Below are positions 15,093 through 58,957 of a stretch of DNA of 64,000 nt, piece by piece. Source of the DNA: Sphyrna mokarran (lineage: Eukaryota). The position numbers and the translations under genes were made by a program. Position 1 is the stretch's first letter. Every line of letters starts with the position of its first letter. The notes under the pieces are model-generated. The model searched no databases, had not been told where the DNA came from, and was given only the letters and a program-made list of their open reading frames with translations. Location of the stretch: NCBI GenBank assembly GCA_024679065.1, contig JAGIQG010000009.1, positions 90,396,001-90,460,000 of the forward strand, read 5' to 3'.

Positions 15093-15452
15093 CCCAGCAA
15101 CTCATGACTCCTCTATCTGATTGGCTGTAGACAGCCAAGCTACTGTTTTCACATCATTCTGCTATTAGTTAGATTTCACAATGTGGAATTAGGTTACCTT
15201 CAGAGACAGGGACTTTCCATCAAAATCTCCAATTACCAGCCACACAACCTGTTCCTTCACAACACTACACAATCTACTGGAGTCAGTGTCAATCTCCATT
15301 CCAGTCTTAGAGACAGGGACTTTCCATCAAAATCTTCATTTACCAGCTTCACACAACCTGCTCTTCCTCAACACAATACAAACTACACTTACCTGGTATA
15401 ATAACAGGAGTCAATGCTGATCTTCATTTCATTCCAGGGACAGGGATTTTCT
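15093..15452 (+). promoter_or_regulatory. Distal X1-X2-Y module (10-bp spacer) followed by tandem NF-kB sites
   Basis: CCCAGCAACTCATG (15093-15106), TGACTC, CTGATTGGCT (15117-15126); GGGACTTTCC at 15209 and 15316, GGGATTTTCT at 15443. Confidence 0.6.
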
Positions 15453-15874
15453 AACTCGCATTCTCAGTGTATGAGTGAGGCTGGAAAGGCCAGCATCTAT
15501 TGCCCATCCATAATAATCCTTTACTGATAGAATCACATAGATCAGAATTTTTATGTCTGTGTCAACTTTTCAAAGAACATGTTAACTCTTTCCACAATTC
15601 TGCTCTTTACCCACATCACTGCAAGATTTTCAACCATCTGCATGAATCTGCATGGATGCATATTGAATCTGCATCCTGTCCCCACATCAGGCAATGCCGT
15701 CCAAATAATAAACATATCCTGTGTAAAAAAGGTTATGTCGTGTTGCTTCTGCTCCTTTTCCCAATCATCTTACTGACCTTTCTTCAATCCATTTCTCTTT
15801 ATTTATCCCAATCTAAACTCTTCATGACTTTATACACCTCAATCTGCTGAACATATCCAGCATTTTCTGTTTTA

Positions 15875-18648
15875 GGACAGAATTTTCCATTCTGTGGACT
15901 AACTCCAGTGACAGGTAGGAAAATGAGTTTGATTCCCTGGATATTGGGAAGGGTTCTTGTGCTAGTTTGTCCATGGTTCAGTTCATTGTAAATGCATCAA
16001 TGAGGAGCTGATCAAATCTCATGACAGAGCAGACATGAGATTCAATCATGGTATGGATTTGAAGGTCCATGTTTAAAAATATTCCCCCCGCAGCCCCGTC
16101 CACTCCCCCACCCCCTGCCAGCTCCTCCACGCACCCCCACCTCACACACACACACAGTCATTCTCTGCAGTTTAAACCTTGTAATCTCCCTCAGAGGAAA
16201 CAAATCCTTTCCTCCATGTTTAGTGACAGCTCCCTGGAAAGACTCCTTCAGGCAGTCTGGGACTGGTGGGAGATTCTTGACTTATGGGACAGAAGCTGGA
16301 GATCCACCAGTCAGTGTGCTGGTCTGGGAGGAGATCACCAGGAGATCAATACCTGTGACCCTCAGAAGAGGATTGAACTGTAGTGCAGGCAGAGGATGAA
16401 TGATCTCAACCGTTCTACCAGAGTAGGTCAACCTTCTCACTCTCAACTGACTCACTTCTAACATCATCAGGTATTCACAGGATCACAATCCTCAGGAATC
16501 TCACACATGACTAACTGAAGGGACATCAGCACTGATTGTCTCACTGATGCTTCAACGTTTTCACCCTCACTGAGAGCACTCAGCACACACAGCAGGTATT
16601 CACGCTTCTCATCTCTTTTTTACCCCTGGTGCTTTCAGTTTATTTATCAGATTTTAGGCAGATCATGACCTCCCACAGCAACAGGGGAGATCTCACACTG
16701 GAGTGGGAATGCCAGGGTTAAGGCCACTCTCTCCCTACAAGGAGCAGAAGGCAGAGCTGGCCTGAGAGAGCAGGAGGTAGAGCTGGGCTGAGAGAGTAGG
16801 AGGAAGAGCTGGCCTGAGAGAGCAGGAGGAAGAGCTGGCCTGAGAGAGCAGGAGGGAGAGCTGGCCTGAGAGAGCAGGAGGCAGAGCTGGCCTGAGAGAG
16901 CAGGAGGCAGAGCTGGCCTGAGAGAGCAGGAGGCAGAGCTGGCCTGAGAGAGCAGGAGGCAGAGCTGGCCTGAGAGAGCAGGAGGCAGTGCTGGCCTGAG
17001 AGAGCAGGAGGCAGAGCTGGCCTGAGAGAGCAGGAGGGAGCTAGCCTGAGAGAGCAGGAGACAGAGCTGGCCTGAGAGAGTAGGAGGCAGAGCTGGCCTG
17101 AGAGAGCAGGAGGCAGAGCTGGTCTGAGAGAGCAGGAGACAGTGCTGGCCTGAGAGAGCAGGAGGCAGAGCTGGTCTGAGAGAGCAGGAGGCAGAGCTGG
17201 CCTGAGAGAGCAGGAGGCAGAGCTGCCTGAGAGAGCCTGGACCGTTCTTGCACAAAAGGCAAGATCAGCATCTCCTAATAAGCCAGTGAGAGTCTGTGCA
17301 GTTTCTGGGTCTTCATGGAGTCCCTCTGGCATATGTTCCACCAGGAAAGGCATGAAAGCAATAGGCCCTTCTTCACCTCCTACTCTGCTTGAAAGTCATA
17401 AAAAAGGCAGTATTGCCTGATTATTTCATGCTACCTGCATCTTTGTGCTTCTATAGATGAGAGACATGATTGAATATTAACCTGCAATGATCACCTTCCA
17501 TCGCCAAGCTAAGGGGAGTTATTGTCTGGTATTTTTGACTTTGGGATTTTCCAGTCTCGCCGAAAGCAGTTCCCATGTAATGGGGTCCCTGGCAGTGTGG
17601 CGAGTGAGAAACACAAATGGCTATTGAATTCAGTGGGACTAGAAGATCCCAGTGACAATCAATGCAAATCACCTCCACCATCGGAAATCCCTCAGTGGAG
17701 TGAACTAGAAAATCCCGGTCATTGTGAATCCCTGGGATAGCCCTCATTCCAGGTATTTCAACACAAGATCCTCCCTTGCAGCTAAAACACATCATGAAGG
17801 ATCACATGTGTCTGAAGGTCCTCAAAAGCATCACCCGTGACCCCCCCTTCTCCTTCGCCCCTCCCTCTTCCACATCCTCCTTCCCCCCTCTCCATTACCC
17901 CAACACCTCAGGCACAACAGCACATTCACAAAGGGGATTGGATCTGAATGAGTACATGCAGCTTCTATCAACCTCAGTCAGAACACTGCCACCCAACATC
18001 TGGTGTCCAAATCCTTCCATTAACATAACGTGTCTCAGTTGAGCTTTGTCCTGAAGTGGAAATTATTAGAGTGTTCCTTCAATCAGTAAGAAAGGACAGT
18101 AATGGATGATTCCCAGAAGCACTCAGATCCTTACTCTAGCAATTCTTTACAAAGTTACTTTCCTACAGTGTCATTGCATCAAGCTGTCGAAATAGTGTTG
18201 CTCCGATTCCACTTTGAGAGCAGTTTCCAGCCCTCTCCTGTCACTATCCACATCCTTCTACCCTCCTTGATCCTTAACAAACCCATTCCCCAGATCACTC
18301 TCCTACTTCCCCCTTTAATCATAGAACCCATCTTCATTGTTATTGATACTCCTCTCTCTAATCTATTTTCTGCTGATATCCCCATGCTCCACATTGACCT
18401 CACCCTTGAAGCCCCCATGCACAGTGACCTACAGGAATCCCCCCACCCATGAGACCACCTGATGTCTCCCTCTTCAAACCTGGACTGGGACTAAGACATG
18501 TACGCCAGGCACAGCCCTATTGTATAGTTAAATTCTGGCTCCAACACTGTGGTACCTTTTAAAGTGGTTGAATCCCACATTACTAGTGCTGCCAGCGCCG
18601 TTGGGAGTTATCCCAATTTTCCTGGTGGCAGCAGGAGAATCATGTCCC
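15875..18648 (+). mobile_element. PIF/Harbinger-like DNA transposon relic with Myb/SANT-like ORF remnant (~16205-16430)
   Basis: Imperfect TIRs GGACAGAATTTTCC / GGAGAATCATGTCC (11/14); remnant FSDSSLERLLQAV...CRQRMNDL resembles Harbinger Myb-like proteins. Confidence 0.5.
16751..17237 (+). repeat. 26-bp G-rich minisatellite, ~19 copies
   Basis: Unit GCAGAGCTGGCCTGAGAGAGCAGGAG; explains ORFs 16647..17353. Confidence 0.97.
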
Positions 18649-18665
18649 ATATTCTGGCTATTCCA

Positions 18666-18965
18666 GGTGCAGCACGGTGGCACACTGGTTAACACTGCTG
18701 CCTCATTGCGCCAGGGACTCAGTTTTGATTTCTGGCTTGGATGACTGTCTGTGCAGAGTCTGCACGTACTCCTCATGTCTGTGTGGGCTTCATCTGGGTG
18801 CTCCGGTTTCCCCCCAGAGTCCGAAGGATGTGCATTGGCCATTCTAAGTGTGCCCTCAATGTACTCAAACAGGCACCAGAGTGTAGCGACCGGGGGATTT
18901 TCACAGTAACTTCATTGCAGTGTTAATGTATGCTTATTGTGACAGTAATAAATAAACTTAAAAAA
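18666..18965 (+). mobile_element. HE1-related SINE with a different 3' tail
   Basis: GCAGCACGGTGGCACACTGGTTAACACTGCTGCCTCA head, GGGTGCTCCGGTTTCC body, tail ..AATAAATAAACTTAAAAAA. Confidence 0.8.
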
Positions 18966-19252
18966 CAGTTGAAATATGATATATTGCCTTTTATAAATTC
19001 AGGAAAACCTCCCAGCTCTCATAATCTGTGTCCCTTTCATCACCAGTAACGTGAGTTTAATGAATGAAACAGGAAGTTATTGCAGTGTTAGTTTGATTGA
19101 AAACTCTCCCAAAGAATATTTCTTTAAATGTTGTGGGTGTCTGAATTTGGAGAGAGTCCAGGGTAAGTGTGAGAGCAGACAGGAACACACAAAACCCACA
19201 GCTTCTGTTTGGGCAGCTGGCATCCTGACTGTGGACAGGTTCAATAGGCTGT

Positions 19253-19296
19253 TACCAATAGGAATTTAGATCACCAGACTGTCATCTGTTGCTGAG
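19253..19296 (-). promoter_or_regulatory. Distal X1-X2-Y module
   Basis: Minus strand CTCAGCAACAGATG (19296-19283) with TGAC, 20-bp spacer, CCTATTGGTA (19262-19253). Confidence 0.65.
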
Positions 19297-19844
19297 AGAC
19301 ATTCTCTCCTGGAGCTCACATTTTATCACAACACTTCTAAATAACTCAGTCCCTTTGCATCTCTCGGGTGAGTTGGTGATCCAGCTCCCTGAGCTTAGCT
19401 GTGGTGAAATACCTCAGTAAAACAGTTTGCGATATATGGACACTAACCCCAGATACAGGGCTGTCCCATCACAGGTCAACACTCAGAGCATCTTCACAAG
19501 GAGAAACAGACCTGGACACAAAACAATCCCTTCCTGGCTGGAAATGGGGACAGTCTTTGCATCATTTTGATCTTTTAACTTCCTGCTGGACAGTAATCTG
19601 AGGGAAATTTTTATTTTAGTGCAGCTAGTCTGGTTTCAACAGGAAAAGATAATTAATGCAGAAAATCAGAGCCTAATGGTTTGAACCAAGAATGTTATCA
19701 GATCTTAGTGTAGTTAAGGACACTCTGCACTGTTACGGTGTAGAAGAAGCTCATTCAGCCCATATTGTCTGCATTAGCTATCGAATGAGCAACTTTTCTG
19801 CCAGTTTCCTGTATTCTCTCTGTAACAGGTGATGTTGTGGCATT

Positions 19845-20203
19845 CATAGAATCCCGACAGTGCAGAAGAAGCCCAATCAGCCCATCAACTCAGTACCAAC
19901 TCTCTAACAGAGTATTTTACCCAGCTCTCTTCCCCATCCTATCCCTATAATCCCACACATTTATTATGGCTAATCCCATCTAATCTCCACATATTTGGAC
20001 ACTAAGGGGCAATTTAACATGGACAATGTACCTAACCTTCACATCTTTGGACTGTGGGAGAAAACGAGAGCACCCAGAGGAAACCCATGCAGGCACAGGG
20101 AGAATGTACAAACTCCAAAAAGACAGTCACCCAGAGCTGGAATTGAACCTAGTTTCCTGGAACTGTGAGGTAGCAGTGATAATCACTGTGTCACTCTATC
20201 ACC
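19845..20203 (-). mobile_element. HE1-like SINE
   Basis: Reverse complement of the same body (ACCTTCACATCTTTGGACTGTGGGAG..CACCCAGAGGAAACCCATGCAG). Confidence 0.75.
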
Positions 20204-20204
20204 A

Positions 20205-21720
20205 ATATTGTCACTGGACTAATAATTCAGAGACAGTGAGATTCTCTAGGGACCTGAGTTTTGAAATTTTAATTCAGCAAAAAAAATCAGGAATTAAAAA
20301 GTCTGATAATGACTGTGAAACCATTGCTGATTGTAGTAAAAGTCCATCTGGTTCAATAATGTCCTTTTGGGGAAGGAAATCTGCCATGTTAACCTGATCT
20401 GGCCTACATGTGACCCCAGATCCACAACAATGTGTTTGATCTTGAAGTGGCCACTCAGTTGTATCAAAGCATTATGAAGCTGAACAGGAATAGAATTGGA
20501 TGGGCCACCCGTCACTAGGTACTGGACTAAATTATGGCAGACTCAGTCCTGTCAACCCTGCAAAGCCTTACTAACATCTGGAGTCTTGGGAGAGATATGG
20601 TACAGACTAGTCAAGCAACAGCCTGACATAGTCACACTCACTGAATCATACCTTACAGATAATGTCCCAGATACCACCATTACCAGCCCTGGGCACATGT
20701 CCTGTTCCACCGTTAGGACAGACCCAGCATAGATGGCAGTATGGTGGTATACAGTCAGGATGGAGTTGCCCTGGGAATCTTCAACATTGACCATGAAATC
20801 TCATGGCCCCAGGTCAAACATTGATAAGGAAACTTCCTGCTGATTACTACGTACTGCCCCCCTTCAGTTGATGAATCAGTACTCGTCCATCTTTAACATC
20901 GCATGGAGGAAGCATTCAGGGTGGCAAGGGTGCAGAATGTACTCTGGCTGGCTTGGTAGTACCACCACAGACTGAACTGGTTGGGTTCTAAAGGATGTAG
21001 CTGCTAGATAGAGGTGGTGAGGAAAACAAGAGGGAGAAACATACTTGACCTCATTCTCATCAACCTCCTGCCATAGATACATCTGTCCATGACTGTATCA
21101 GTAAAAGTGACCACAGCACAGTCACTGTGCAGACGAAGACCCATTTTGATATTGAGATTCCCCAACCAATAGATTAGATCCAAGTTCTGCAGTCCTTCCA
21201 CATCCAGTCAGGAATGATGGTGGACAATTAAAAACTCACTGGAGGAGGAGGCTCCATAAATATTCCCATCCTCAGTGATGGAGGAGCCAAGCACATCGTA
21301 ACAATCTTCAGCCAGAAGTACCAAGTGGATAATCCATCTTGGCCTCCTCCAGAGGTCCCCAGCATCTCAGATGCCAGACTCCAGTCAATTCGATTCATTT
21401 CATGTGATATCAAGAAATTGCTGAAGGCATTGGATTATGCAAAGGCTGTTGGACCTGACAATATTCCAGAAGTTGTACACTGAAGACTTGTGCTCCATAA
21501 CTGGCTGCTCCCCTAGCCAAGTTCTTCCTGTATAGCTACAACACTGGCATCTAACCGGAAATGTGGAACATTTTTCAGTTATGTCCTATACACAAGAAAC
21601 AAACCCAGCCAGACGAATTACCGCCCCATCAGTCTATTCTCAATTATCAGTAAAAGGATAGAAGGGCAATCAACAATACTATCATTAATTACTCATTAAT
21701 AACCTGCTTATGGATGGTCA
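20205..21720 (+). mobile_element. CR1-group LINE with SINE-like 5' head; endonuclease to RT remnants
   Basis: LGE..RLVKQQPDIV.LTESYL (APE N-terminus), LDLIL.N, KA.GPDNI, PVHKK. Confidence 0.75.
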
Positions 21721-24700
21721 GTACTCTGCCAGGGTCAGTACTCTGCTCAGTACTCAGGATTCTGCCAGGGTCACTCAGCTGTACTTTCTGTCAGTGCATG
21801 AACATTCTATAATGAGGAACACTTGCAGCAAATGGACAGATCCTCTCACGCCTGGTTTAGTTATCAGCATCACGAAAACAAATGTCATTGTCCAGATGTT
21901 ACCATTCTACCATCGATCAAAATTAAAATCAATTCCCACTGCAAAAACTTCAGTTATTGTGTCCAAACTGAGTATGAGAGTGTCAAACAAGAGCAACATG
22001 ATTATAAACACCATCCAACTTTCTTTTGAAATTCTTTATTGGCTGGAACTCTCCAGGTGTTTATGGCCTACTGCTGCTGCCAGTGAGAATTTGGCACTCA
22101 GCCAAATCTCCATTCACTGCAGTGATTGGGAGAATCCTAGCTGTGGGTAAGATTAGAGAATCTGGCCCATTGTCTTTGCTTCCACCATCCTTGTGGGCAG
22201 TGAGTTACAGATCATTACCAACAGCTGCATAAAGAATGTTCTTCCTCGTATTCCCTCTGCATCTCTTACCAAAACCGTAAACCGATATCTCTTAATCCTT
22301 GTACTGTTTTGTCATACCAATGCTGTCATAAATACGTTAATCACAGAAAATTGTTTCTCTTGAAGGCCTAAGGACATTCTGGAAGAATTTGTGTTTTTAA
22401 AAGTTCTTAAAATGTTAGTTCAGGGTCTCTGGTTGCTGTTGTTCCTGACAAAGATAGCATATTACATAAAAAGGTAATTAAGCAGTTTTGAAGAAGCTGG
22501 TTAGCTATTTACAGAAAGGTCACATGATAATTCATAGTTTTGAATTAAAATCATACCTAGAAAACTGTGTTTAAAAGCTAGTAGGCTGATTTGCTTTTGG
22601 GGGTATGGTGTGTTGATGGGGGAGAGTAGAAGGAAAAGGATCAATTGCTTGGATAAAGACATAAACAGTTCCTGAAGTTCTTGACCCAATCCAAAGATGG
22701 AAACAATGGAAGTTGCTCCAAACTCGCTCTACATTCTGAAATGGACCAACTGTAAAATTCTCTCGAAGGACATCTGAAAACTGGGCAAGAGCTAGTGACT
22801 ATTTCTCAGACTTGTAAGTCAACCAGACTCTATTTCAAGGACTTCATCCTTTTCCTTTGAACAATTGATTTTTAATAATTTGGTAGAATTCTTCTATTGT
22901 ATCTTTTTGTGGGTGTGAGTTAAGGTATTTATAAAGAGTAATTATAATTTCACATTTCATAATCTAGGCTATTAAACTTTGCTCCTGTACTTGACAAGAG
23001 TAGTTTTATAATAAACTAATAATTTTGTTGTGTATTGAAGAGATTAATGGGTGAATTACATACTTAGTCATGTAGCTGGCTGGGAAAATAATTTAAATAG
23101 AGGTTGAGATCCATGGTGCAGAGGCAGTAGAGACAGATAGCACCCCCTCCTCCCCCGCTCCAGGTTGTTACAATGGGAACAGTTTTCTTTATCTCCATTA
23201 TCTAAATTTCTCTTTATCTTGTACTGCCCTGTAAAATCTCCCCTCAATTTCCTTTATCCCAAAGGTAACAACACCAGCTTTTCCAATTTAATCTTGCAGC
23301 TAAAGTCCCTCATCTTTGGATTAAGACATAGTCAACAATCCCAGAGGTCTTGGAGTGTGCTGTCACCATCAGTGTACACACATTGCTAAGTCAATGATGT
23401 CTGCACTGGCTCAGCCACATTATTGGACAGCAGCTGTATATCCAAAGATCTTCTGCAGACTGCACTGACCACTGGATGCTGGGCATCTGTATCTCTGCAA
23501 CAAGGACAGCCATAAGCAGCATGTGACGATCGCAGATATTGCCAACTGACAACTGAGAGACAGTCACCAACATCTGTGATCTCTGGAAGCTGACTTTTTG
23601 GAATGGCATTATCAGAGGTGAGCAGAAATAGATATCTCGTACACAGAAAAAGAGGATTCAGAGAAAACAGAGGCAGGCGAATACTGAACTCTCTCAGCCC
23701 ATTGTCTTCCTTTGCAGTAAATACAGTACAGATTGCCATATCAGAGTGGGCTCTGCTGTCATACTAGGTGATGCTTAACACAAAGTTAACCTTTATCTCA
23801 TGAGATGGAAGGATAATAATTAATTCATGGTTAGACAAAATGTGTAATAAGGGCAGTAGTGACACGATCCTGGGAAAGCCCAAGCTGAGTGAACTGGTTA
23901 TTGTGAAGTATGTGTTGTTTTATAACACTGTCAATGGCTTTTTCTATCACTTTGTTGATGATCAAGAGTAGACTGTGGGCTGGTTATTGCCTGGATTGGC
24001 TTCTTCCTGTTTCTTATATACAGGACATAGCTGGTCCATGTTGTAATTGTACTGAAACACCTTGACTAGTGCAGCTGTAGGTTCTGGAGCACAAGTAATA
24101 TTGTCAGGACCCATTGCCTTTGCAATGTCCAGTGTCTTCAGCTGTTTCTTCATATGAAGAGTGAATTAAAGCTTGAAGACCGAACTGCTGGTGACCACTG
24201 GAGGAGGCTGAGATGGATCATCCACTTGGCACTTCTGGCTGAACATTGTTGAAAATGCTTCAGCCTTATCTTTTGCACTGATGTGCTGGGCTCTTCCATC
24301 ATTGGCAATGGGGTTACTGGTGAAACTTCCTCCTCTAGGGAGTTATTTAATTATCCACCATTATTCATAGTTGGATGCAGCAGAATTGCAGAACTTAGAT
24401 ATGATCATTGCTTGTGGGGTCATTTAGTTCTATCTATTACTTGCTGCTTATCTGTTTGGTGAGCAAGAGGTCCTATCTTGTAGCTTCACCAGGTTGACAC
24501 CTAATTTTTGGGTCTGCCTGGTATTGTTCCTGGCAAGCCCTCCTGCACTCCTCATTGACCCAACATGGTGGGAATGGCAGAGTGGGGGATATACAGGGCG
24601 ATGAGGTTATAGATTGTGGTTGAGTACAATTCTGCATTGTGGCAGTGTGATACAGCATGTTTTTTAATTTAATTTGCAGGATATGGGTATTACTGGCTAT

Positions 24701-24947
24701 TCCAGCATTTATTGCTCATCCTTAAAAGACATTCAAAAGATGGTGGTGAACTGTCCTTGCAGCCGCTGCACCTGTGGTATATGAACAATTAGTGCTGTTA
24801 GGGAGAGAGTTTCAGGATCTTGACCCAGTGACAGTGAAGTAAGAGCAATATAACAAACTTACAATTTTGGTATTACTGTGTATCTGTAGCATTTGCCCTT
24901 TTAGATGGAGCTTTGGCGAGTTCTTGCAGTGCTGTTACTGTGTGTCA
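21436..24947 (+). repeat. Segmental duplication copy B
   Basis: Direct-orientation paralog of 1-3850; lacks the 2911-3292 insert and ~280-577, and carries extra ~23575-23805. Confidence 0.92.
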
Positions 24948-25232
24948 GTGGTGGAGGGAGTAATGAAGGGTCTCCTCATTGTGAAGGGAGTAATTCATAA
25001 GGACAGTGTAGTGCTCAGCCCCCCAGCATATTGTTATGGACAGATGCATCTGCACCAAGTTGATAGAAGACCGAAGGATTTAACAAAGGGGAAATGCAAA
25101 TTGGTGCCAATTGCAAGTCATTTAGAGTAGAGTTGGGGAAGATCTTATAATCAATAATCTGGGACAATAAAAGGTGCCATTCATGTACCCTACAGTGTTT
25201 GTGCTAATAATGAAATTTTTTGTATTGAAATA

Positions 25233-25297
25233 TAACCTCAGAAAAACATTCTGCCTGGCAACAGATGACATGTCCCATTTTTAAAATTTCATTGGCT
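25233..25297 (+). promoter_or_regulatory. Distal S-X1-X2-Y module (candidate RFX/CREB/NF-Y/CIITA enhancer)
   Basis: TAACCTC (S-like) -14 bp- CCTGGCAACAGATG (X1, 25254-25267) with TGAC X2 half-site, 20-bp spacer, TTCATTGGCT (Y, 25288-25297); kB-like GGGATTTTCC at 25382. Confidence 0.7.
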
Positions 25298-25544
25298 AAG
25301 TATGTTTGTCTTTATAACGTATTAACACCACTTGACAGATTAAGCAATCGCAGTAAAATATTGACTTGCTGTTTGTAGTTGGGGATTTTCCATTCATGCC
25401 CTTCCCCCTCGCTGCAAACTGGAACCCAAGAGAAACTCTTTGCAGCTCTGTGTTTCTTAATCTAGAATAACCAATTCTCAACAATAAACTCCACTTCCTC
25501 CACCTGTTCTCTGGAACAAGTTCCCTTTGAACACCACTCACTTG

Positions 25545-25830
25545 CTCCAAATAAACAGAGTACCTGCTATGTGTACTTGCATGGCTCCAAGCAACACCAG
25601 CTTTTTTGTGGGACATGTCGAACATTCCTTATTTACTAAGATTCCCATTCTCATCTTTTTTTCCGGTACATAAATGATTGTATTGCTGCAACTTCCTGTT
25701 CTCACTGTACACAAGGAATTGAGATGACTTCTTTCCAATTGTCACCTTTCTCTCATCTTCACCTATTCCCTGACCATTCCCACCCTTAACTTCCCTCTAT
25801 TCTGTTTTCGGGGAAGACTATTAAGGAACA
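25545..25830 (+). mobile_element. Penelope-like RT fragment
   Basis: AM.T.MAPS...FVG.VE..FRYI.DC remnant. Confidence 0.55.
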
Positions 25831-25861
25831 TTCACCAAATATACATATAAACATACAAAGT

Positions 25862-26338
25862 AAGAGCAGCATTCTTTCTGGTTGTATCACAGCTTGATAT
25901 GGCTCCTGCTCTGCCCAAGACCGCAAGGAACTACAAAAGGTCAGTGAATGTAGCCCAATCCATCATTCAAACCAGCCTCCCATCCATTGACTCTGCCTAT
26001 ACTTCCTGCTGCCTCAACAAAACAGCCAGCATAACTAAAGAACCCACGCACCCGAGACATTCTCTCTTCCACCATCTTCCTTCAGGAGAAAGATACAAAG
26101 GTTTGAGGTCATGTACCAACTGACTCAAGAACAGCTTCTCCCCTGCTGCTGTCAGACTTTTGAATGGGCTTACCTTGCATTAAGTTGATCTTTCTCTGCA
26201 CCCTAGCTATAACTGTAACACTACATTCTGCACTCTCTCCTTTCCTTCTCTATGAACAGTGTGTTTTGTCTGTAAAGCGTGCAAGAAATAGTTCTGAGTG
26301 TTAATACATGTGGCAATAATAAATCAGATCAAATCAAA
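25862..26338 (+). mobile_element. Rex1/Babar LINE 3' end
   Basis: SILSGCITAW.GSCSAQDRKEL..V..AQ.I..TSLPSIDS.Y..HP.HSLF..LPSG.RY; tail AATAAATCAGATCAAATCAAA. Confidence 0.8.
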
Positions 26339-26377
26339 GGCTCTTAGCCACAGATAATAAATTAATATTGGAATGAT

Positions 26378-26447
26378 CGTGTAGAGATGCCGGCGTTGGA
26401 CTGGGGTAAACACAGTAAGAAGTCTGACAACACCTTATCAGACTTCT
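26378..26447 (-). mobile_element. 70-bp Penelope 3'-end insertion with fold-back and 12-bp TSD
   Basis: Matches Penelope termini at 60601-60655 and ~8180-8232; TATTGGAATGAT at 26366 and 26448. Confidence 0.75.
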
Positions 26448-29609: not shown

Positions 29610-30480
29610 GCATTAAGACCATAAGTAATCATACATATGGACTAAAACAATGGAAACAAGAACTGCAGGAGATCATCCATCAACTCCAAACTTACTGTTT
29701 TCAATAAGATCAAGGCTGATTGTGGTTTAAATTTCCTGCTTTTTCCTGTAAATCTTGATCCTTTGAATTTAAAAAGATATCTAACTCACTCATATTTAAT
29801 AGTTCACTAAGCTTCATAGCTCACTGTGAAAGAAAATCCCAAAAGTCAACAGTTCTACATTTAAATGGAGACTTTTTTTTGAAATCATGGCCCACAATTC
29901 TAGATTCTCCCATAAAAGAAAACATCCTCTCCTGTTAACTATCCCCTCCACCTCAGAATCTTGTCACAATACAATCACCTTATTTGTGAACCTCAATGAA
30001 TATAGGCCCAATCTGCTTAACATCACCTCATAAGACAATTCCATCAACTCAGGAATCAATTTAGTGAATCTTTGATTTGCTTCTAAGGTGACTCTAACCT
30101 TTATGTATAATTGTAACAAGAGTCCTACCTTTATATTCCCTCCTTTGCAGTGCAACTAAAATTCCAATTATTTTCCTAATTCACCACACCTGTTGCTAAC
30201 TGTGATTCATGTGCAAGAATAATCAGATCCCTCAAAGCAGTCTGTTTAAGTCCTGTTTTATTTTGCATGCTAAAACAGACTTCACATTATATTCCATTTG
30301 CTAATTTTTTAAATCACAGGTAGAGGTGGGAACATCAGGGTGGCAGCATGGGCTTGTTGGGCCGAAGGGCCTATTTCCCGTGCTGTTTTGTTCAAATACT
30401 TTTAGAAATCCTAATACATTATATCTACTGATTTCCTTTTTCCCACCCACTACCTTTTCAAAGAACTTGTGAATATCAGT
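29610..30480 (-). mobile_element. Highly decayed CR1 with a short 3'-end fragment of a younger CR1 family (+, 30316-30392)
   Basis: QRFTKLIP..LSYE.LSRLGLYSL (ORF 29964..30155). Confidence 0.65.
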
Positions 30481-31371
30481 CAGGTACATGTGTCCAATTC
30501 TGCTATTCTCTGGCTGATGCTTGGGACTTGATCTTTTGTGACCATGGTAGGGTTACCTTCACCTCAAGTTCAGCACAACTCTAACCACTTGATATTATTA
30601 AAGACAGCCCAGTGATTCAGCCAGGAACCTCAATTCAAGCCTGCTCAGTAAAGCACTTCAGTCAAATTAAGTGTTTCCCCAGTAAAAGTTTCTTCCTTGT
30701 GATTATTCAGATTCAATTAGAAACCAAGAGGCACTTCCTCAATTTGTTTACTCAGCCAATACTTGGAGAAACTCTCTCAGGACATTGATACAAATGCCTA
30801 GTTATTCTAACACTAATTCCCTAGTTATAGGATAGTTATTCTGTGACTGTCTAGTTATCTAATGATAGAGCAAGGACAGTAAGCCAACTGGGATTTATTT
30901 CCAGTCTGACAGGCACAGATTTAGTGTGAACAGAAAACTAAATTGGTCTCCTTCCCAACCAGAGATACTGTTCCGCCTGATTCTGTCATTGCTCTGGTAG
31001 CCAGCTATATTTTATTGAATCACCATTGATTCTAAATTGAGTAAGCTACTTTGAATGGTGGTGTAGTTTTGTGGCTATAAATCAAGATGTGGTCAATAAT
31101 CTTACTGGGGAGTTTGAATTGGGTATTGCAGGATACCTAGGCCTCTAGCCCAAGTTTTGTACTGTAAGACAGTTGTTAGAAACGTACACACCAGAAAGGG
31201 GACTCATAACTAAAGCCAAGTGCACCAGCCTCTTACCGAGCAGAGAAGAAAGAGAATTTCTGCATTGCTCCAGTGATTTGATTGTGGAGGCTCCAGGGTG
31301 ATTAATTGGGGGGAATGAAAAGCTTTTAAATTACTGTAGTGAGTGCAGCAACAGCAAAAGTACAAGTGATC

Positions 31372-31377
31372 TTTAAT
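31372..31377 (-). terminator. Candidate polyadenylation signal ATTAAA for the MHC IIB gene (alternative AATAAA near 31011)
   Basis: Hexamer ~460 nt after the stop with U/GU-rich sequence downstream; no transcript evidence. Confidence 0.3.
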
Positions 31378-31835
31378 CAAATTGGTTCCACTATGACAGA
31401 CATTCAAAGATTAAAAATCAAAATCTGCATAAAATCATTTAGATACTAAATTGGACTAGTAAATAATGTAGATTTCTAATCATTTACAACAAAGAAACTA
31501 AAACAGAAAGATTCAGCCTGCCACACAGATATGATACAGAGATCAGTGCTGGCTGTATCACATCTGGGTATAAGGAAATTGGGAAGGTGTCACTCAGGTT
31601 GGCAGCAAGCTATACACTGATTATATTCAGTTTAGTTGTGTATTTAACATAAATAAGCTGCAGTGTAAAAATATCCCATATCAGCAAAATGTTAAATTGC
31701 AAGTAATCAAAAGCTGAGTCAAGCAGCATGAACTGTAATCACTCTGGATTCTGAGTCAGGAAGAGTTAAAGATGCATTTAAAGCTGTTCCATCTTGTTGT
31801 TCCAATATCTCCAATCACATCCATGAGTGGGTCAG

Positions 31836-31861
31836 TTAACTTACAGCTGGACCCATCAGAC
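31836..31861 (-). CDS. mhc2b: MHC IIB exon 6 coding part RLMGPAVS*
   Basis: Acceptor TCTTTGTTTCAG, in frame with exon 5, TAA at 31838-31836. Confidence 0.75.
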
Positions 31862-34800
31862 CTGAAACAAAGATTCAGTGTTAGAAAGTACCAGGAACAT
31901 TTTGGTGTAGAGCTCCAAACAGTACATGGTCAGCCTGTAGTTAACTTCAATAGGTACTTCATTGACAGACTGACAATAGAGCTCAATATACACAAGATTG
32001 GAAGCTTCTTTGGAATTATATTGTACAATTCAGAAATGATCAAGGCTGCAAACATGGAGTCCTGCCTTGCAAAACTATCACCATAATTCCCATCCTTGCC
32101 TGATAACCTGCCTTTTGTATATTTTTGCAGAAATGGGATTGGTAGAAATAGGGTAGCACATGGTATAAAAGGGCCTGAATAGCCATTTTGGGTTAGGAAT
32201 AGGAAGAGAAAGATATGGATAGCAAAGGAAGGAGGGTAAGAAGAGGATAGAGGAAGGTATAGGAAAGGAGTGTTGTTTATGGAGAGGTGTTGTTTTCAAT
32301 GTTTTATTACTCCAAGAAACCTGTTCAATTGTTCAAGTTGCACTTACTGTTCAGTGACATTTTGCTTTTTAAACTTTGACTTATCTTTTTAATAGTTAAT
32401 AAACTGAAATCATTTAAGGTGCTCTCTCTCTAACATGGCACAATTTACAACTGAGGTTATTGCAAAGTGAACTTTACAAATCTTAGTTCAGGTAAATAAT
32501 GGTCATCAAGCAGCAGAGATGTGATTAAGATTAAGTACTTTAGTGATAAGTTAATGCTACATGTTTGGAAACAGCTAACTAACAAGTCTTTAAGATGAAG
32601 CAAGCACAACTGTTCTATTTTGTCTTAGTACTAAGTGAATCTAGACTATTGATCTGGGAAGTTTGAGTTATGTTTAAATGCTTATTTAAACCTGACAGTT
32701 TGATTCAAGTAAGTGGCTATTTTATTCAATCCAAGGTTAACAGTAAGATACAGAAGTCATAAAATATGACTCATTTAGCTTATGGACATTGTTTAATATC
32801 ACTTCAGATAGCACAAAGAACAGTTTTTGAGCTTAAGACATGAGACCTCCATTCCAAACAGAAAGAAATCCAGTTAAAGCAGCTGAAACAAAACAGAATA
32901 GACAGTTTTGTTACAACAGGAGGGCTATATTATTGCTTCTGCTAGAGACAGTTATGAAATCAGAAGATTAAGCAGAGACTTTCATGAGCTGAGGAAGCAT
33001 GTGTCTTAAACTGGAAATGTGACTCAGATTTTAGTGAGTGTTTGATGGAAGAGAGAGTGGAGATAGACTATTATGTGCAAGTATTATTTCAGAGAGATTG
33101 AATTAAGTGGCTTTGATTCCCATTCTTCACTCCTTTTGGTAAGGGAGCCAAAAGGAATAGAATTAGAGGAAATAAAAATTATGAAAAGGCATTTTGCAGA
33201 CTTATGATTGGGAATTTGATGAGCTGATAAGGAAAAGTATAGTTATTTCTGCAGTTAGAAAGGGAGAAACTTGTCAGTGTGCCTCCAAAAACCAGAAACC
33301 TTGGTAATAGGAGACAGTAAAAGCAGAAGGGTGTTTTTCTGGCTGGAGTCAGTCACCAGTGGTACAGGGACCTCTTCTATTTGTAATATATATAAATGAC
33401 TTGGAAGAGGGAGTAAGCAGAGTGATCAGCAAACAATACAAAGATGGCTGGATTTGTGGATAGTGATCAGGCGATACAGCAGGACATAGGCTGGTAGCTT
33501 GGGCAGACAGATGGCAGATGGAATTCAATCCTGATAAATGAGGTGATGCATTTCAGGAGAAAATGTAGGGGGGAAGGTATATGATAAAGGGTAGACCTAT
33601 TAAGAGTGTAAAAACAGAGGGACTTGGTGGTGCAGGTGAACAAGTCTCTGAAGGTGGCAGAGCAAGTGGAGAAGGTTGTGAAGAAAACATGGTATGCTAG
33701 CCTTTATAGGAAGGGATATAGAGTACAAGAGCTGGTCTTTAATGTTGCAGTTATATAAAACGTTGGTTAGGCCTCATTTGGAATATTGCATCCAGTTCTG
33801 GTCGCCTTACTACTGGAAGGACATGGAGAGTGTGCAGGGGAGGTTTAGCAGGATGCTGCCTGGTATGGAAGGTCTGAGTTATGAGAAGAGGTTAGACATT
33901 TGGGACCATTTTCCTTAGAAAGACATTAGACTTAGAGATCTAATAGGTATACAAGATTATGAGGGGTATAGATAGCGTGAACAGGGTTAAGCTTTTTCCT
34001 AGGATGGACTCAAATAACACAAGGGGTCACAGGCTTAAGGGGTAAGGTATAATTTGGATGCTAGGAGTTTTTCTCCCCCCAGAGGGTGGTGGGGGTATGG
34101 AATATGCTGCCAAGTGATGGAGATAGGTACTCTGGAGTTTGAGATACTTAGATGGGCACATGAACAGAATGGGAATGGAGGGATATAGAAAACTGATTTA
34201 AAATAGGGATCATGAGCCTTGGGATAATTCCTGCAAAGTGTGTAAATAGTCAATGATATTGATGAACTTGTTTTATCCTACAGGTATTTTGTTTTGCCTT
34301 GTTTAACAAGAGGCATACATGCGATGGGTCATGAGGGCTGCTCTTGGATTTTTTGAGTATCCTAGTGCTTCACGTTGTTAGTGTATGCTTGACCTGGACC
34401 ATTTGATGGACAACACAACAGCTCAGTGACTATCACTGTGCTGTGCAGATACATGGATTTGGGCCTGTGTCTGTGGGAGTATGCACATTCTCCAGGTGCT
34501 CTGGTTTCCTACCACATCCCAAAGATGTACTTTTGGGCTGATTGGCAGAACAAATTCTCCCTAAATGGTCTCAAATTTGGTTTCAATCTATAGATCTATA
34601 AACAGACAGGGATCATGGGCAGAAGTGGGAACATCAAGGTGGCAGTGTGGGCTTGTTGGACCTAAGGACCTGTTTCCTGTGCTGTTTTGTTCAGAATGCA
34701 CCTGTGGATGAAGTGAGATGAGCTCTTCTTCCTGAGGTCTGAACAATCTCCATCCATTACTGACTGGCTAAACTGGTGTTTAACAATTTCTCCTTGAACT

Positions 34801-37800
34801 TCACTTCCTCTAAATAAATGATATGGCTATGGGCTCCAACATGGGTCCCAGTTATGCCAATCTTTATGGGTTGTGGAACATTTCCTGTTTTAATCTTACT
34901 CCAGCCCCCTCTAACTCCTTTATCTGTATATCAATGACTATTTTGGTGCTACTTTACACTCTTGTCTGGACCTAGAAATTTTAATTTCATTGCTTTCTCA
35001 CCATCACATGGCCCATCTGACACTTCCCTTCCTTGACTTGTCTATTTCTGGTGATATTGTATCAGTATCCATTACAAGCTCATTGATCCCAATAACTACC
35101 TTGACCACAGCTCTTCACACCCACATCCTGTGGGCTCCATTCTAAACATCTAGTTCCTTTAGCTGTTGCATCTATTACAATGCTGCTGCTATTGGTCTTT
35201 AACTGTTGTTTTCCACCCACTGGTTCACAGGGCTTTCAACATTCCTTGGGCCACTGCTCTCACCTTCCTCCAGAGAAGGATTAGGTCCCCAGCCTTCACT
35301 TTTTAACCCCACCAGCCTCCTTTCCCTCCTGCCCAAAATAAATCAGCATTCTTTAGGGACTGTTCTCTGGAACACACTCCTCTCCCCCAACAATCAGATG
35401 CAACACCTGCCCCTTTACTTTCTCCTATGTTCTAAAGACATCAGGTGCTTCAAGCATATCTTCAATCTGGGAGCAGCAAATGCAATAAATCAATGTGGCT
35501 CATTCAAGAGACCAAATCTGTATTTTTCCACAAATCTTGCTTTCCATCTTTGTCCCTATTCCATTAAGGTCAACTGGTTGCATTCCTATACTCCATTGAC
35601 ACTGATCTTTAGCACCATTTAGCCTTTATCATTTACACTCCATTTACCTGTGCCATTCCTATCTATTGTACCACCACCCCCCCCCCCAACCATTGTCTAA
35701 ATCTTGTCTGTTTTTCCTCAACTGATGAAGGATCATCCAGGCTCAAAACATTGGCTCTATTCTCTCCCCAGATGCTGGCAGACCTGCTGAAATTTTCCAA
35801 CATTTTTGATCTAGATTCCTGCATTTGTAGTATTTTGTTTTTGTTTCTACTTATGCTTGAGTCAAGCAAATTAGTTTATGTAAAAAATGTGTTTAATTCA
35901 TGAGGGAAACAAATTGAAATGGGAGAAAGTGGTATAATATTTGAAGTTAAGTTTAATGCAAGTTACATAGGGTTATGCAAGTGAGTAAATACTAAGTTGA
36001 TTTAGAAAAATCTCCATAGCCTTTTTAAATGCAACTTCTTACTAGTTAGAGGGGAAGTTGATCCCTCAGCTAACACCTCACCTGTCAAAGGGGAGTACCT
36101 TATTTTATAATCTGTTGAGAGAGAAATATTATGCTCTTCAATGACTGGTTAAATCAAAAAACCATCTGAGACTCAATGAACAGGTTAACAAAACCAAATA
36201 AAGTACTATTCTAATTGAATGCTGTTACCTAATTTCTAGTAGACAGTACAACCAGATTTTTATTAGAATATTGTCTTCTTTGCCATCTTCATTATGAATT
36301 GAGACTCCCTAAGACATGAGCTGTGGCAGAGGCAATTGCTAACTGTCTCATACCCCTAATGACATGTCAATATCCCCACATGTTATTGTCTTGGCAATCT
36401 GAACCAAATTCAAATCTGATAGGCTGGTGTTAACCAAGTGCTTGGGCCAAATTCAACAACAGCCTGGCCTTCTGATACAATGTTTGTGTATTGCATGCAT
36501 CCACAATTAAACTATTTTTTTTTAAAAGGGACCACACATTGCTTTTCATGCTAGCATTTTACACAATTACCAATTCTAATGTTCTACTGAACTTAGCAAC
36601 AAGTTGCAGTAAGGTTGACAGGTACGAGTGTCTGTAAATGCTAGGCTCTGAGTCAAAGATTTTTTTTTTATTACAAACAAGGTCCCAGTAGATGGAGTCC
36701 AATGTCAGGAACAAGTTAAAACAATAAAATGTAAACACAATTAAGTAAGACAATCAAGACCATTTCTTGGAAAAATAAAGAAAAAGGAAACCTGTTGGTC
36801 CTAAAACAATTCATTTGGAATGCAAAATGTCTGGTGTAAGAAATAGAAATGCCATTTAACATAATCCAAATATGCTGATGTTTAGAGACATTGTTTTAAA
36901 GGTAGGATGATATTTGATTGAGCTGTAAAGCTTCTAAGGTTCAAGCAAAATTAGGTATAACTATTGCATCTTAAAGATGAATGGGAATTTGAATTCACAC
37001 CAGATATAGTCTAATTCAATACTATTTGTTTTAATGGACATTCTAAAGTGTAGATAAGACTAGGGCTGGAATTTTCTGGCTGCTCATGCCAGCAAGTTCC
37101 TCCAGGCCTGCTAATGGCACACCCTACTGCAGAGTTCCCAGTAGCATGGGATGAAATCAATAGGAAATTCACTGAGTGGTGGGACCAGAAGATCCTGCCA
37201 TTGGCAAGCTGTACTGAAATGTGGCTGAGGTTGGAGAATCCCACCCTAGTTAAGTGATTCCTCTTGGGAAGTAGTGTTCTTGCCTTAGATTAAAAACAAA
37301 TGCTATAGTCTGGCTGCTACCTGCAGCATCAGGACTATATATAGAGATGAGCAAAGACTTTGAAAATCAGCTGAGTCTAGAATATGCTGACATAGAGATG
37401 CTGCACAAGTATTGTTTGAAGTAGCCAACAGAATAGGAAGTCAGCTGGTTCAAAATAGTCAAATTGAAAAAACAGATCAGTCATGTTTAGCTAATTCAAG
37501 CAGCATAAAATGGTGAACAGAATGAGACTTTGAATTGGACTTGATTTGAAGTGGAATAAAAACTAGTCTCAAGTTGAGACATTCCTGATCCAAGCTGACA
37601 AGGACTCTCACCTCCTGTCTTGGGCTTGATCTACATGATCCAAACTGATTGGAATAGGTATAGCTCCAAGACTTGATCTCATTTGCATCTTAGCCAAAAG
37701 GCCCAGATGCCACTTAAATGCTTCAAACAAAAAATATAACCTAATGACTTCAACCAAGCACAGCATGTCAATACTACATTTGACCTTAGCCAGGGGCAAT

Positions 37801-58709: not shown

Positions 58710-58957
58710 CTTTAAATACAGATACTGACCAATCACAACGGAGCATAAAGATTGACCAATCACATACCAACACACTGACCAATAAGTAGCAGGAAAATCA
58801 TCCAATCAAATCTATACATCCGGGGAATAGGGACCAATCAGCATCAAGAGCTCCGGGAGACAGCGGAGCCAATCAGAGCTTTGAATGGGCAAGCGGGATC
58901 ACGGATAGTAACAAGCCAGTCAGAGACGGGAATTAGTAATCGTCATCTGTTGCCATG
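58710..58957 (-). promoter_or_regulatory. MHC class II proximal promoter: X1 (58944-58957), X2 TGACG, variant Y box (58914-58923), six inverted CCAAT boxes, TATA-like TATTTAAA (58711-58718)
   Basis: Sense strand CATGGCAACAGATG-ACG.. vs HLA-DRA CCTAGCAACAGATG-CGTCA; 20-bp spacer then CTGACTGGCT; CCAAT on + strand at 58729, 58756, 58779, 58802, 58834, 58869. Confidence 0.85.

What the first reader, a model, noticed from the sequence alone, without database searches (positions are those of the whole stretch)
15093..25391. Cluster of orphan MHC-II X1-X2-Y modules downstream of a shark class II beta gene: candidate distal enhancer/LCR system
Seen: the 12-mer GCAACAGATGAC (X1 core + X2 half-site) occurs three times in my manual scan, at the gene promoter (58942-58953, -), at 19281 (-) and at 25258 (+). 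Chance expectation is about 128000/4^12 = ~0.008 per window under uniform base composition. In each case a Y-type box follows after exactly 20 bp. A fourth variant (15093) has a perfect Y box after 10 bp. The three distal modules lie in non-TE islands with no recognisable class II exon next to them, in both orientations, accompanied by NF-kB and IRF/Ets motifs. Known: RFX (X1), CREB (X2) and NF-Y (Y) form the CIITA enhanceosome, and mammals have distal S'-Y'/XL modules that act as long-range enhancers. Inference: a similar distal CIITA-dependent enhancer architecture exists in cartilaginous fish; I am not aware of it being described there.
Basis: partly seen in the sequence, partly recalled or inferred. 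Interest (0 to 1): 0.85.

Follow-up and report, generated by a model that had tools for sequence, protein, structure and literature searches.

The report
Orphan MHC X-Y modules behind shark class II gene
Three copies of the short DNA code that switches on MHC class II genes lie, with no gene of their own, 5 to 15 kb behind a shark class II beta gene, so sharks may use the remote class II enhancers known in mammals; this is not yet shown by experiment.

Summary
GCAACAGATGAC occurs 3 times (0.01 expected): in the beta-gene promoter, at 19281 (-) and at 25258 (+). ATTGG (ACTGG in the promoter) follows after the same 21 nt each time. A variant at 15097 has ATTGG after 11 nt, one helical turn less. 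The composite pattern appeared in 0 of 200 shuffles.

Outside the core, the three 12-mer copies (promoter, M19, M25) are unrelated (15-37% in register), and the flanks of the three distal modules are not repeated in the window. No Ig or Pfam exon lies near them. One run, probably RNA, holds an exact contig of the beta gene's 3' exon but nothing over the 25.2-25.8 kb module.

Best reading (0.5): distal RFX/CREB/NF-Y enhanceosome sites, like mammalian S'-Y'/XL enhancers.

Unproven or against:
- No chromatin or binding data.
- CpG depletion at the distal modules; the X2 CpG survives only in the promoter.
- No clear S box.
- NF-kB co-location is marginal, and no canonical IRF/Ets site was found.

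Unchecked scan notes report similar clusters behind another class II beta gene 238 kb away and upstream of CD74. Verdict: new member of a known kind, moderate interest.

The parts
25258..25295 (+). Module M25: X1-X2 core GCAACAGATGAC (25258-25269), a 21-nt spacer, then Y core ATTGG (25291-25295). It is the most canonical distal module and lies at least 5.0 kb beyond the beta gene's 3' exon.
   Evidence: No contig of run X1 lies on 25201-25800.
25382..25391 (+). kB-type site GGGATTTTCC, 87 nt downstream of the M25 Y box.
   Evidence: (1 of 10 kB-type matches in the window).
19255..19292 (-). Module M19: GCAACAGATGAC (19292 down to 19281), a 21-nt spacer, then ATTGG (19259 down to 19255). Its orientation is opposite to M25.
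   Evidence: Flanks are unique in the window.
15097..15124 (+). Module M15 (variant): GCAACTCATGAC (15097-15108), an 11-nt spacer, then ATTGG (15120-15124) inside CTGATTGGCT.
15202..15386 (+). Two copies of a repeat with a period of about 107 bp (78 bp aligned at 86%), each carrying GGGACTTTCC (15209, 15316). A third, degenerate copy with GGGATTTTCT lies near 15440. The repeat sits just downstream of M15.
58916..58953 (-). Proximal X-Y module of the beta gene: GCAACAGATGAC followed by G (so the X2 box reads TGACG), then the variant Y ACTGG at the canonical 21-nt offset. The 12-mer starts 297 bp upstream of the ATG.
58729..58873 (-). Array of six ATTGG (inverted CCAAT) boxes between the X-Y module and the TATA-like TATTTAAAG.
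   Evidence: offsets 68, 103, 135, 158, 181, 208.
30364..58656 (-). MHC class II beta gene. Exons: E1 58656-58553; beta1 about 54935-54670; beta2 52096-51806; CP/TM about 43515-43396; cytoplasmic 40205-40176; last exon from 31861, with stop TAA at 31838-31836 and a 3'UTR reaching at least 30364.
   Evidence: The closest protein is P0164 of Mustelus asterias (91% in beta2, 83.8% mean over 265 aa).

Best explanation
Two strong modules (M19, M25) and one variant module (M15) are gene-less copies of the MHC 'X1-X2-Y' enhanceosome code. They lie about 5, 11 and 15 kb beyond the 3' exon of an expressed shark class II beta gene, in both orientations.

Proposed mechanism:
- The RFX complex binds the GCAAC-containing X1 box.
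- A CREB/ATF-type factor binds the adjoining TGAC half-site.
- NF-Y binds ATTGG on the same face of the helix. The spacer is 21 nt, or 11 nt in M15, one turn less.
- The assembled platform recruits CIITA in antigen-presenting cells.
- It acts at a distance as an enhancer or locus-control cluster. The target would be the beta promoter 34-44 kb away, or another class II gene beyond the window start.

Shown here: the motifs, their identity with the gene's own promoter core, the fixed spacing with unrelated spacer sequence, and the absence of repeats, exons and (for M25) transcripts.

Inferred: which proteins bind, CIITA dependence, enhancer activity and the target gene.
For: - The 12-mer occurs 3 times against 0.01 expected.
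- The composite with the Y box gave 3 hits, against 0 in 200 shuffles.
- In-register identity among the promoter, M19 and M25 is 12 of 12 in the core. Elsewhere it is 13-22 of 60 upstream, 5-7 of 21 in the spacer and 12-20 of 80 downstream. Only the motif and the spacer length are kept. [quoted passage not shown]
- In mouse, Y lies 20-22 bp from X (PMC4374748, passages).
- Distal S-Y enhancers in either orientation are established in human MHC-II and Ii (PMC1802633 Table 1 and text; PMC4243378).
- Module flanks are unique in the window. No LINE protein similarity lies between 14.7 and 23.2 kb.
- No C1-set relic is found: 1 of 2146 ORFs, the beta2 exon itself, matches. None of 10 nearby ORFs reaches a Pfam cut-off, and Rfam gave 0 matches.
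- Run X1 carries an exact 1509-nt contig over the beta gene's last exon (depth 590) but depth 0 over 25201-25800.
- Unchecked leads: scan notes s1-887203 and s1-886783 report similar clusters at another class II beta gene and at CD74 in this genome.
Against:
- CpG o/e in 400 bp around the modules is 0.06 (M15), 0.10 (M19) and 0.23 (M25), against 0.39 at the promoter module and a window median of 0.10. The distal sites therefore look methylated in the germ line like bulk DNA.
- The X2 box is TGACG only in the promoter. It is TGACA in M19 and M25 and TGACT in M15, which is what CpG decay would leave and is a weaker CRE half-site.
- No convincing S box is present; only a weak shared A-rich stretch lies near -32.
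- kB sites are not enriched in the window (10 against 8.7 expected), and no canonical ISRE or EICE lies near M19.
- M15 sits next to a kB-bearing tandem repeat that could be a solo LTR. This was not testable.
- RNA evidence is one small run kept as contigs. Its RNA status is the tool's guess, and it covers M25 only.
- The pattern that admits M15 was defined after seeing it.
Confidence: 0.5

Rival explanations
1. The modules are promoters rather than enhancers. They could be relics of class II (alpha or beta) genes lost by birth-and-death evolution, or working promoters of unannotated genes or non-coding RNAs whose exons were not recognised.
For: - S-X-Y modules typically lie within 300 bp of a start site (PMC4243378).
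- M25 has a TTTATAA 17 nt downstream of its Y core.
- The loss of the X2 CpG and background CpG o/e at the distal sites fit silenced, decaying DNA.
- Large repeat insertions, which could have disrupted or replaced former exons, lie just downstream of M25 (25868-26434) and between M19 and M25 (21439-24940).
- No RNA data exist for M15 or M19.
Against: - No C1-set relic lies anywhere near the modules. Only the beta2 exon scores; the next hit is E 0.01, inside intron 1.
- The tblastn hit at 26814-26942 is E 0.43, and E 9.7 by profile.
- None of 10 neighbouring ORFs reaches a Pfam cut-off.
- No contig lies over M25 and the 500 bp downstream in a run that holds the beta 3' exon at depth 590.
- Neutral decay deep enough to erase exons should also have broken a 12-of-12 core plus exact spacing, and this would have to hold twice.
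Confidence: 0.25
2. The modules are RFX/E-box/CCAAT composites that are non-functional or serve another programme, such as other RFX family members or bHLH factors on CAGATG. The resemblance to the class II code would then be coincidental or a fossil.
For: - The core contains a generic RFX half-site and an E-box.
- In human cells thousands of RFX5/CREB1/NF-YB co-bound sites exist, and only a small fraction are good XY boxes (PMC4381081).
- No S box was established.
Against: - The core is identical to the class II promoter core in the same window, at the same 21-nt offset to Y. Chance expectation for the 12-mer is 0.01 per window, and the composite occurred in 0 of 200 shuffles.
- The modules cluster beside a class II gene.
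Confidence: 0.15
3. The modules belong to an unrecognised interspersed repeat, for example a solo LTR carrying M15 with its kB repeats.
For: - The window is rich in LINE and SINE-like copies.
- M15 is followed by enhancer-like tandem repeats with GGGACTTTCC.
- A very high-copy repeat lies 570 bp from M25.
Against: - No second copy of any module flank exists in the 64 kb window, even with 7-base words.
- The four modules share nothing but the motifs.
- No contig at 90% or more likeness lies on 25201-25800, whereas the neighbouring repeat draws thousands.
- A genome-wide check was not possible.
Confidence: 0.08

Closest known systems
Human distal S'-Y' enhancers of the MHC class II locus (the HLA-DRA upstream enhancer 'DRAe' and intergenic modules #2, #4, #6, #8)
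   Same: Promoter-type S-X-X2-Y modules that lie away from any start site inside the class II region, in either orientation, several per locus. In human they are bound by RFX and CIITA and are active as enhancers (PMC1802633 Table 1 and text; PMC4243378).
   Different: - The shark modules lie 3' of a beta gene.
- No S box was established.
- X2 is a TGACA or TGACT half-site.
- No binding or activity data exist.
- The animal is a shark, for which my library searches found no description.
[quoted passage not shown]
   Same: A cluster of intergenic CIITA/XY-box sites between class II genes. PMC4381081 reports 12 intergenic sites in the locus, four of them between DRB1 and DQA1. For PMC7041702 only the search listing and abstract start were seen.
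   Different: XL9 works through CTCF. No enrichment of a CTCF-core pattern was found here: 2 one-mismatch matches against 1.49 expected, neither within 1.5 kb of a module. Super-enhancer status is defined by chromatin marks, which are not available here.
Extra S'-Y' and Y''-S'' modules of the invariant chain (Ii/CD74) gene
   Same: Several dispersed S-Y modules serve one antigen-presentation gene (PMC1802633 Table 1). An unchecked scan note reports four such modules upstream of CD74 in this same genome (s1-886783).
   Different: It is a different gene, and that shark locus was not seen by me.
Proximal S-X-Y promoter modules of MHC class II genes and of RAB4B
   Same: The same X1-X2-Y order, the same orientation logic and a constrained X-Y distance. 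The shark gene's own promoter carries the identical 12-mer.
   Different: The three distal modules have no detectable exon beside them. For M25 there is also no transcript.

Membership tests
MHC S-X-Y (S-Y) enhanceosome module | X1 box (RFX site) with a GCAAC core | tested here: met
   The 12-mer is identical in the class II beta promoter, M19 and M25. M15 differs at 2 of 12 positions. Identity of the first 10 bases with the human DRA X box is recalled. The only support from a call is that one HLA-DRA X-box paper holds the 10-mer (search listing); the passage could not be read.
MHC S-X-Y (S-Y) enhanceosome module | X2 box (CRE/TRE-like) directly abutting X1 | tested here: inconclusive
   A TGAC half-site is present in all four modules. 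It reads TGACG only in the promoter, TGACA in M19 and M25, and TGACT in M15. The CREB site is also the most variable element in human (PMC4381081 discussion passage).
MHC S-X-Y (S-Y) enhanceosome module | Y box (inverted CCAAT, ATTGG) downstream of X at a constrained, helically phased distance | tested here: met
   The spacer is 21 nt in M19 and M25, and in the promoter's variant ACTGG. It is 11 nt in M15, exactly 10 less. The literature gives Y at 20-22 bp from X in mouse (PMC4374748) and whole-turn periodicity at CIITA-regulated sites (PMC4381081). Box boundaries are defined differently in those papers, so the match is approximate.
MHC S-X-Y (S-Y) enhanceosome module | S (W) box about 16 bp upstream of X | tested here: inconclusive
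   Only a weak shared A-rich 8-mer lies near -30 to -33, matching 5-6 of 8 positions per module. No reference profile was available, because figures and supplements are not held.
MHC S-X-Y (S-Y) enhanceosome module | Cooperative binding of RFX, CREB and NF-Y, and recruitment of CIITA | not testable with these tools
   Needs ChIP, CUT&RUN or EMSA.
Distal S'-Y'/XL enhancer or locus control region | Lies away from any transcription start and any exon | tested here: met
   No C1-set exon, no Pfam domain and no Rfam family lies nearby. For M25 no contig covers 25201-25800 in run X1. M15 and M19 have no RNA data, so for them this is met only as far as exons go.
Distal S'-Y'/XL enhancer or locus control region | RFX- and CIITA-dependent enhancer activity, open chromatin and H3K27ac | not testable with these tools
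   No such data are reachable. The low CpG o/e at the modules is indirect and, if anything, unfavourable.
Distal S'-Y'/XL enhancer or locus control region | Conservation at syntenic positions in related species | not tested
Orthologous proteins to start from are P0164, P0169, P0165, P0173, P0160 and P0159.
Proximal promoter of a class II gene | Start site and first exon within about 300 bp, with class II exons downstream | tested here: not met
   Not met for M25. For M15 and M19, exons are absent but transcripts were not examined.
Interspersed repeat | Further copies of the flanking sequence | tested here: not met
   None in the window, and none among X1 contigs for M25. The whole genome was not searchable.

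The most novel reading that the evidence does not exclude
The multi-module, phase-locked X-Y cluster is an ancestral class II locus-control or super-enhancer architecture that predates the split of cartilaginous and bony vertebrates. The enhanceosome code is kept at a phase compatible with the mammalian one (21-nt spacer, whole-turn variant), and the cluster recurs behind paralogous class II beta genes and at CD74 in the same shark genome.
Probability: 0.3. Interest if true: 0.7.

Novelty: new member of a known kind. Interest (0 to 1): 0.5.

Why it matters
Distal S-Y enhancers and the DR/DQ super-enhancer are known only from human and mouse. It is open whether long-range, CIITA-based control of class II loci is a mammalian elaboration or part of the original MHC design.

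A shark locus with several phased, gene-less X-Y modules would place that design at the root of jawed vertebrates. It would also provide short, well-defined elements that can be tested directly in existing human RFX5- and CIITA-deficient cell lines.

If the modules prove to be relic promoters instead, they would record gene loss in a shark class II region.

Tried and rejected
1. Looking for hidden class II exons beside the modules.
- A regex for the C1-set signature found 1 hit, the beta2 exon.
- tblastn of P0007 and P0008 and of 33 beta chains found only the known exons. The one extra hit was a weak one at 26814-26942 (E 0.43).
- A C1-set profile built from 567 domain segments of the held proteins scored 1 of 2146 ORFs convincingly. 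The next hit was E 0.01 at 57083-57241, and 26787-26993 scored E 9.7, so I treat that as noise.
- Pfam on 10 ORFs next to the modules gave 0 above cut-off. One sub-threshold TMEM95 hit scored 15.2 bits against a cut-off of 27.

2. Getting a class II alpha query. 10 of the 150 listed representatives were scanned. None of the 10 had MHC_II_alpha and 2 of 10 had MHC_II_beta. No alpha-specific search was therefore made; the generic C1-set profile stood in for it.

4. Repeat origin. Self-BLAST at two sensitivities and LINE-protein tblastn found none for the module flanks.

5. Accessory motifs. kB, ISRE, EICE, octamer, CRE and CCAAT scans against 100 shuffles showed no window-wide enrichment. Only the kB co-location with M15 and M25 stood out, and it is marginal. 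A CTCF-core pattern gave 2 matches against 1.49 expected, neither within 1.5 kb of a module.

6. CpG-island status. Only the promoter/exon 1 region, the beta1 exon region (54.6-55.0 kb), one further window at 59401-59800 and a young LINE have raised CpG o/e.

7. Literature.
- Eight searches for shark, elasmobranch, cartilaginous-fish or teleost SXY or class II promoter work found no description.
- Almeida et al. 2020 (PMC8010645) has 0 occurrences of 'promoter' or 'regulatory'.
- PMC4219347 has 0 occurrences of promoter, X box, Y box, CIITA or SXY.
- A sequence-word search returned mostly primer matches and was useless.
The S-Y profiles, PWMs and site tables in the supplements of PMC4381081, PMC4374748 and PMC4243378 could sharpen the consensus and spacing comparison, and I did not see them.

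8. Scan look-ups by sequence and by relatives were blank.

Full report
**What is in the sequence**

GCAACAGATGAC occurs three times in the 64-kb window, at 19281-19292 (-), 25258-25269 (+) and 58942-58953 (-). The expected count from dinucleotide-preserving shuffles is 0.01, and 0 of 100 shuffles reached 3.

Read in register, each copy is followed after exactly 21 nt by a Y-type core:
- ATTGG at the 19.3 kb copy (M19).
- ATTGG at the 25.3 kb copy (M25).
- ACTGG at the 58.9 kb copy.

A fourth site, GCAACTCATGAC at 15097-15108 (M15), is followed after 11 nt by ATTGG inside CTGATTGGCT. Its spacer is exactly 10 nt shorter.

The composite GCAAC..ATGAC + 8-24 nt + ATTGG has 3 matches in the window and none in any of 200 shuffles. 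That pattern was written after seeing M15, so its significance for M15 is overstated. For M19 and M25 the a-priori test (extra exact copies of the promoter's own core) is already decisive.

**The gene**

The 58.9 kb copy sits in the promoter of an MHC class II beta gene on the minus strand.

| Exon | Coordinates |
|---|---|
| Exon 1 (signal peptide) | 58656-58553 |
| beta1 | about 54935-54670 |
| beta2 | 52096-51806 |
| Connecting peptide / TM | about 43515-43396 |
| Cytoplasmic | 40205-40176 |
| Last exon | from 31861, stop TAA at 31838-31836 |

I searched the beta2 exon alone against the protein representatives (collected: 2859 proteins at E up to 0.001, the best 150 listed). I then searched the full-length database protein P0008 (32 proteins at E up to 1e-30 among 803 candidates). 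The joined coding sequence of the window's gene was not built or searched.

Of 33 beta chains laid on the window, P0164 of Mustelus asterias is closest: 91% in beta2, 94% in the signal peptide exon, and 83.8% mean over 265 aa. The window is therefore from a carcharhiniform-type shark.

The promoter module lies 297 bp upstream of the ATG. It is followed by six true ATTGG boxes at 68-208 nt and a TATA-like TATTTAAAG.

**Are the distal modules copies of something?**

They are not, as far as the window can show.
- Outside the 12-mer, in-register identity between the promoter, M19 and M25 is 13-22 of 60 upstream, 5-7 of 21 in the spacer and 12-20 of 80 downstream. That is background level.
- BLAST of 13-27 kb against the window, and of each module's 800-1000 bp surroundings with 7-base words, finds no second copy of any flank.
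- The exception is a 78-bp direct repeat just downstream of M15 (15202-15277 against 15309-15386, 86%).
- A 5'-truncated LINE copy ends at 14706, and no LINE protein similarity lies between there and 23200.
- 21439-24940 is a copy of 4-3818 (82-94%) that stops 318 bp before M25.

So what is shared is a 12-base core, a Y core and a spacer length, but not the spacer sequence. This is the signature described for mammalian XY boxes. Spacing is retained but not the intervening sequence, and CIITA-regulated sites differ by whole helical turns (PMC4381081, passages read). In mouse, Y lies 20-22 bp from X (PMC4374748, passages).

By recollection, the first ten bases of the core equal the human HLA-DRA X box and the human spacing is the same to within a base or two. 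The only support from a call is that one HLA-DRA X-box paper holds that 10-mer (search listing). I could not read the passage.

**Are they really orphan?**

- A signature regex found one C1-set exon in the window, beta2.
- A C1-set profile built from 567 domain segments of the held proteins scored 1 of 2146 six-frame ORFs convincingly (E 9e-45, beta2). The next hit is E 0.01 at 57083-57241 (+), inside intron 1 and far from the modules.
- A weak tblastn hit 1.5 kb downstream of M25 (26814-26942, E 0.43) drops to E 9.7 with the profile, so I treat it as noise.
- None of 10 ORFs beside the modules reaches a Pfam cut-off, and Rfam finds nothing in the window.

**Transcripts**

The run search on 25000-32000 returned one run, X1 (98 million letters, kept as contigs, 'RNA?' by the tool's guess, share of words 0.23). 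It was laid on 25201-31200 at 90% likeness or more, and 4032 records were placed.
- One exact contig of 1509 nt (0 differences, depth 590.6) covers 30364-31200 and runs on beyond the laid stretch. Its length fits the last exon up to the acceptor at 31861.
- It stops at 30364 where a repeat begins. The 3'UTR is therefore at least 1.47 kb, and its true end may lie further on.
- The three bins 25201-25800, which hold M25 and the 500 bp downstream of it, have depth 0.
- 25868-26434 draws thousands of contigs at 90-95% likeness, which marks it as a very high-copy repeat.
- Exon-only coverage by unique sequence is what an RNA run gives. That X1 is RNA remains my inference.
- Contigs show presence, not absence, so weak enhancer RNA is not excluded. 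An abundantly expressed gene driven by M25 is unlikely in that sample.
- M15 and M19 could not be examined, because one read-laying run of 6000 letters was allowed.

**Points against a working enhancer**

- The window is strongly CpG-depleted (o/e 0.14 overall).
- Raised o/e is found at the beta promoter/exon 1 region (0.61-0.66 in 400-bp windows), the beta1 exon region, one window at 59401-59800 and a young LINE.
- Around the modules (400 bp) it is 0.06 for M15, 0.10 for M19, 0.23 for M25 and 0.39 for the promoter module. The window median is 0.10 and the 90th percentile 0.34.
- The base after the 12-mer is G in the promoter (TGACG), A in M19 and M25 (TGACA) and T in M15. TGACA is what deamination of a methylated CpG would leave.
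- The CREB site is also the most variable part of human XY boxes (PMC4381081), so this weakens the case without excluding function.
- No S box could be established. The best shared 8-mer upstream (near -30) matches 5-6 of 8 positions in the other modules.

**Accessory motifs**

- GGGRNWYYCC occurs 10 times against 8.66 expected. 3 of the 10 lie 112-219 bp from M15 or 124 bp from M25, and two of these are in one tandem repeat.
- No GAAANNGAAAS or GGAANNGAAA lies within 400 bp of any module.
- One octamer lies 164 bp upstream of M25.
- No CTCF-core enrichment was found.

**Reading**

The most economical explanation is that M25 and M19, and less surely M15, are distal enhanceosome platforms of the kind known in human.
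- S-Y modules outside promoters (DRAe, #2, #4, #6, #8, and the extra Ii modules) bind RFX and CIITA and work as enhancers (the RAB4B S-Y module worked in both orientations in reporter assays) (PMC1802633).
- Distal CIITA intervals and 12 intergenic sites, including XL4 and XL7, mark the human class II region (PMC4243378; PMC4381081).
- The DR/DQ intergenic cluster is a super-enhancer (PMC7041702; listing and abstract start only).

The relic-promoter rival is weakened by the absence of any exon trace together with a perfectly kept core and spacing at two sites. It remains possible if the exons were deleted rather than decayed. Chance and repeat origin are unlikely on the window's evidence.

**Context from the scan (unchecked AI notes)**

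The same genome is said to hold:
- Three orphan X-Y modules 3' of another class II beta gene 238 kb before this window (s1-887203).
- Four S-X-Y-like modules upstream of CD74 (s1-886783).
- A class II promoter with a displaced X-Y module and 11 CCAAT boxes (s1-886848).

If true they make the architecture recurrent, but I could not see that DNA.

**Novelty**

My ten library searches found no description of S-X-Y modules, proximal or distal, in cartilaginous fish (two searches were sequence-word searches). The main paper on cartilaginous-fish class II genes does not mention promoters (PMC8010645). The library lacks most subscription journals, and supplements were closed.

The thing itself is a known kind, distal S-Y modules, in a new lineage and shown in silico only. 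I rate it a new member of a known kind with interest 0.5.

Noticed in passing
window 25868-26434: A very high-copy repeat. Thousands of short X1 contigs at 90-95% likeness pile up here (summed depth 16,000-36,000), with many internal joints. 26380-26434 also matches 60602-60656 and 8175-8223 in the window.
   Followed up: partly
window 16742-17236: A 26-bp unit repeated 19.2 times (93% matches) in the GC-richest part of the window (GC 0.58-0.64), with almost no CpG (o/e 0.00-0.03). It lies between the converging modules M15 and M19 and gives long spurious ORFs on the minus strand.
   Followed up: partly
window 4-3818 and 21439-24940: A 3.5-kb stretch is present twice in direct orientation at 82-94% identity. 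It is a repeat or segmental copy that ends 318 bp before M25. The region 2965-3228 / 4170-4433 also holds an inverted duplicate with identical ORFs.
   Followed up: partly
window 57083-57241 (+): An ORF in intron 1 of the beta gene, on the opposite strand, matches the first half of the C1-set profile weakly (E 0.01, 13.3 bits). It could be a relic half-exon or chance.
   Followed up: no
window 58729-58953 (-): The beta promoter has ACTGG instead of ATTGG at the canonical Y position, followed by six true ATTGG boxes at 68-208 nt. It is one of the few stretches of the window that keep CpG (o/e 0.61-0.66 in 400-bp windows).
   Followed up: partly
window 15202-15470 (+): A tandem repeat with a period of about 107 bp has two good copies and one degenerate copy, each with a kB-type site (GGGACTTTCC twice, GGGATTTTCT once). 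It lies directly downstream of M15 and could be an enhancer duplication or part of a solo LTR.
   Followed up: partly
window 30364-31861 (-): The last exon of the beta gene carries only 8 codons plus the stop, and a 3'UTR of at least 1.47 kb. It is covered by one exact 1509-nt contig in run X1. The contig breaks at a repeat, so the true poly(A) site may lie further downstream.
   Followed up: partly
window 13549-13761, 18677-18834, 20040-20194, 44990-45076, 50819-50902: A SINE-like element recurs at 71-87% identity. When translated it gives a ...GRK.EHPEETH... motif. Copies flank M19 on both sides, at about 450 bp and 750 bp.
   Followed up: no
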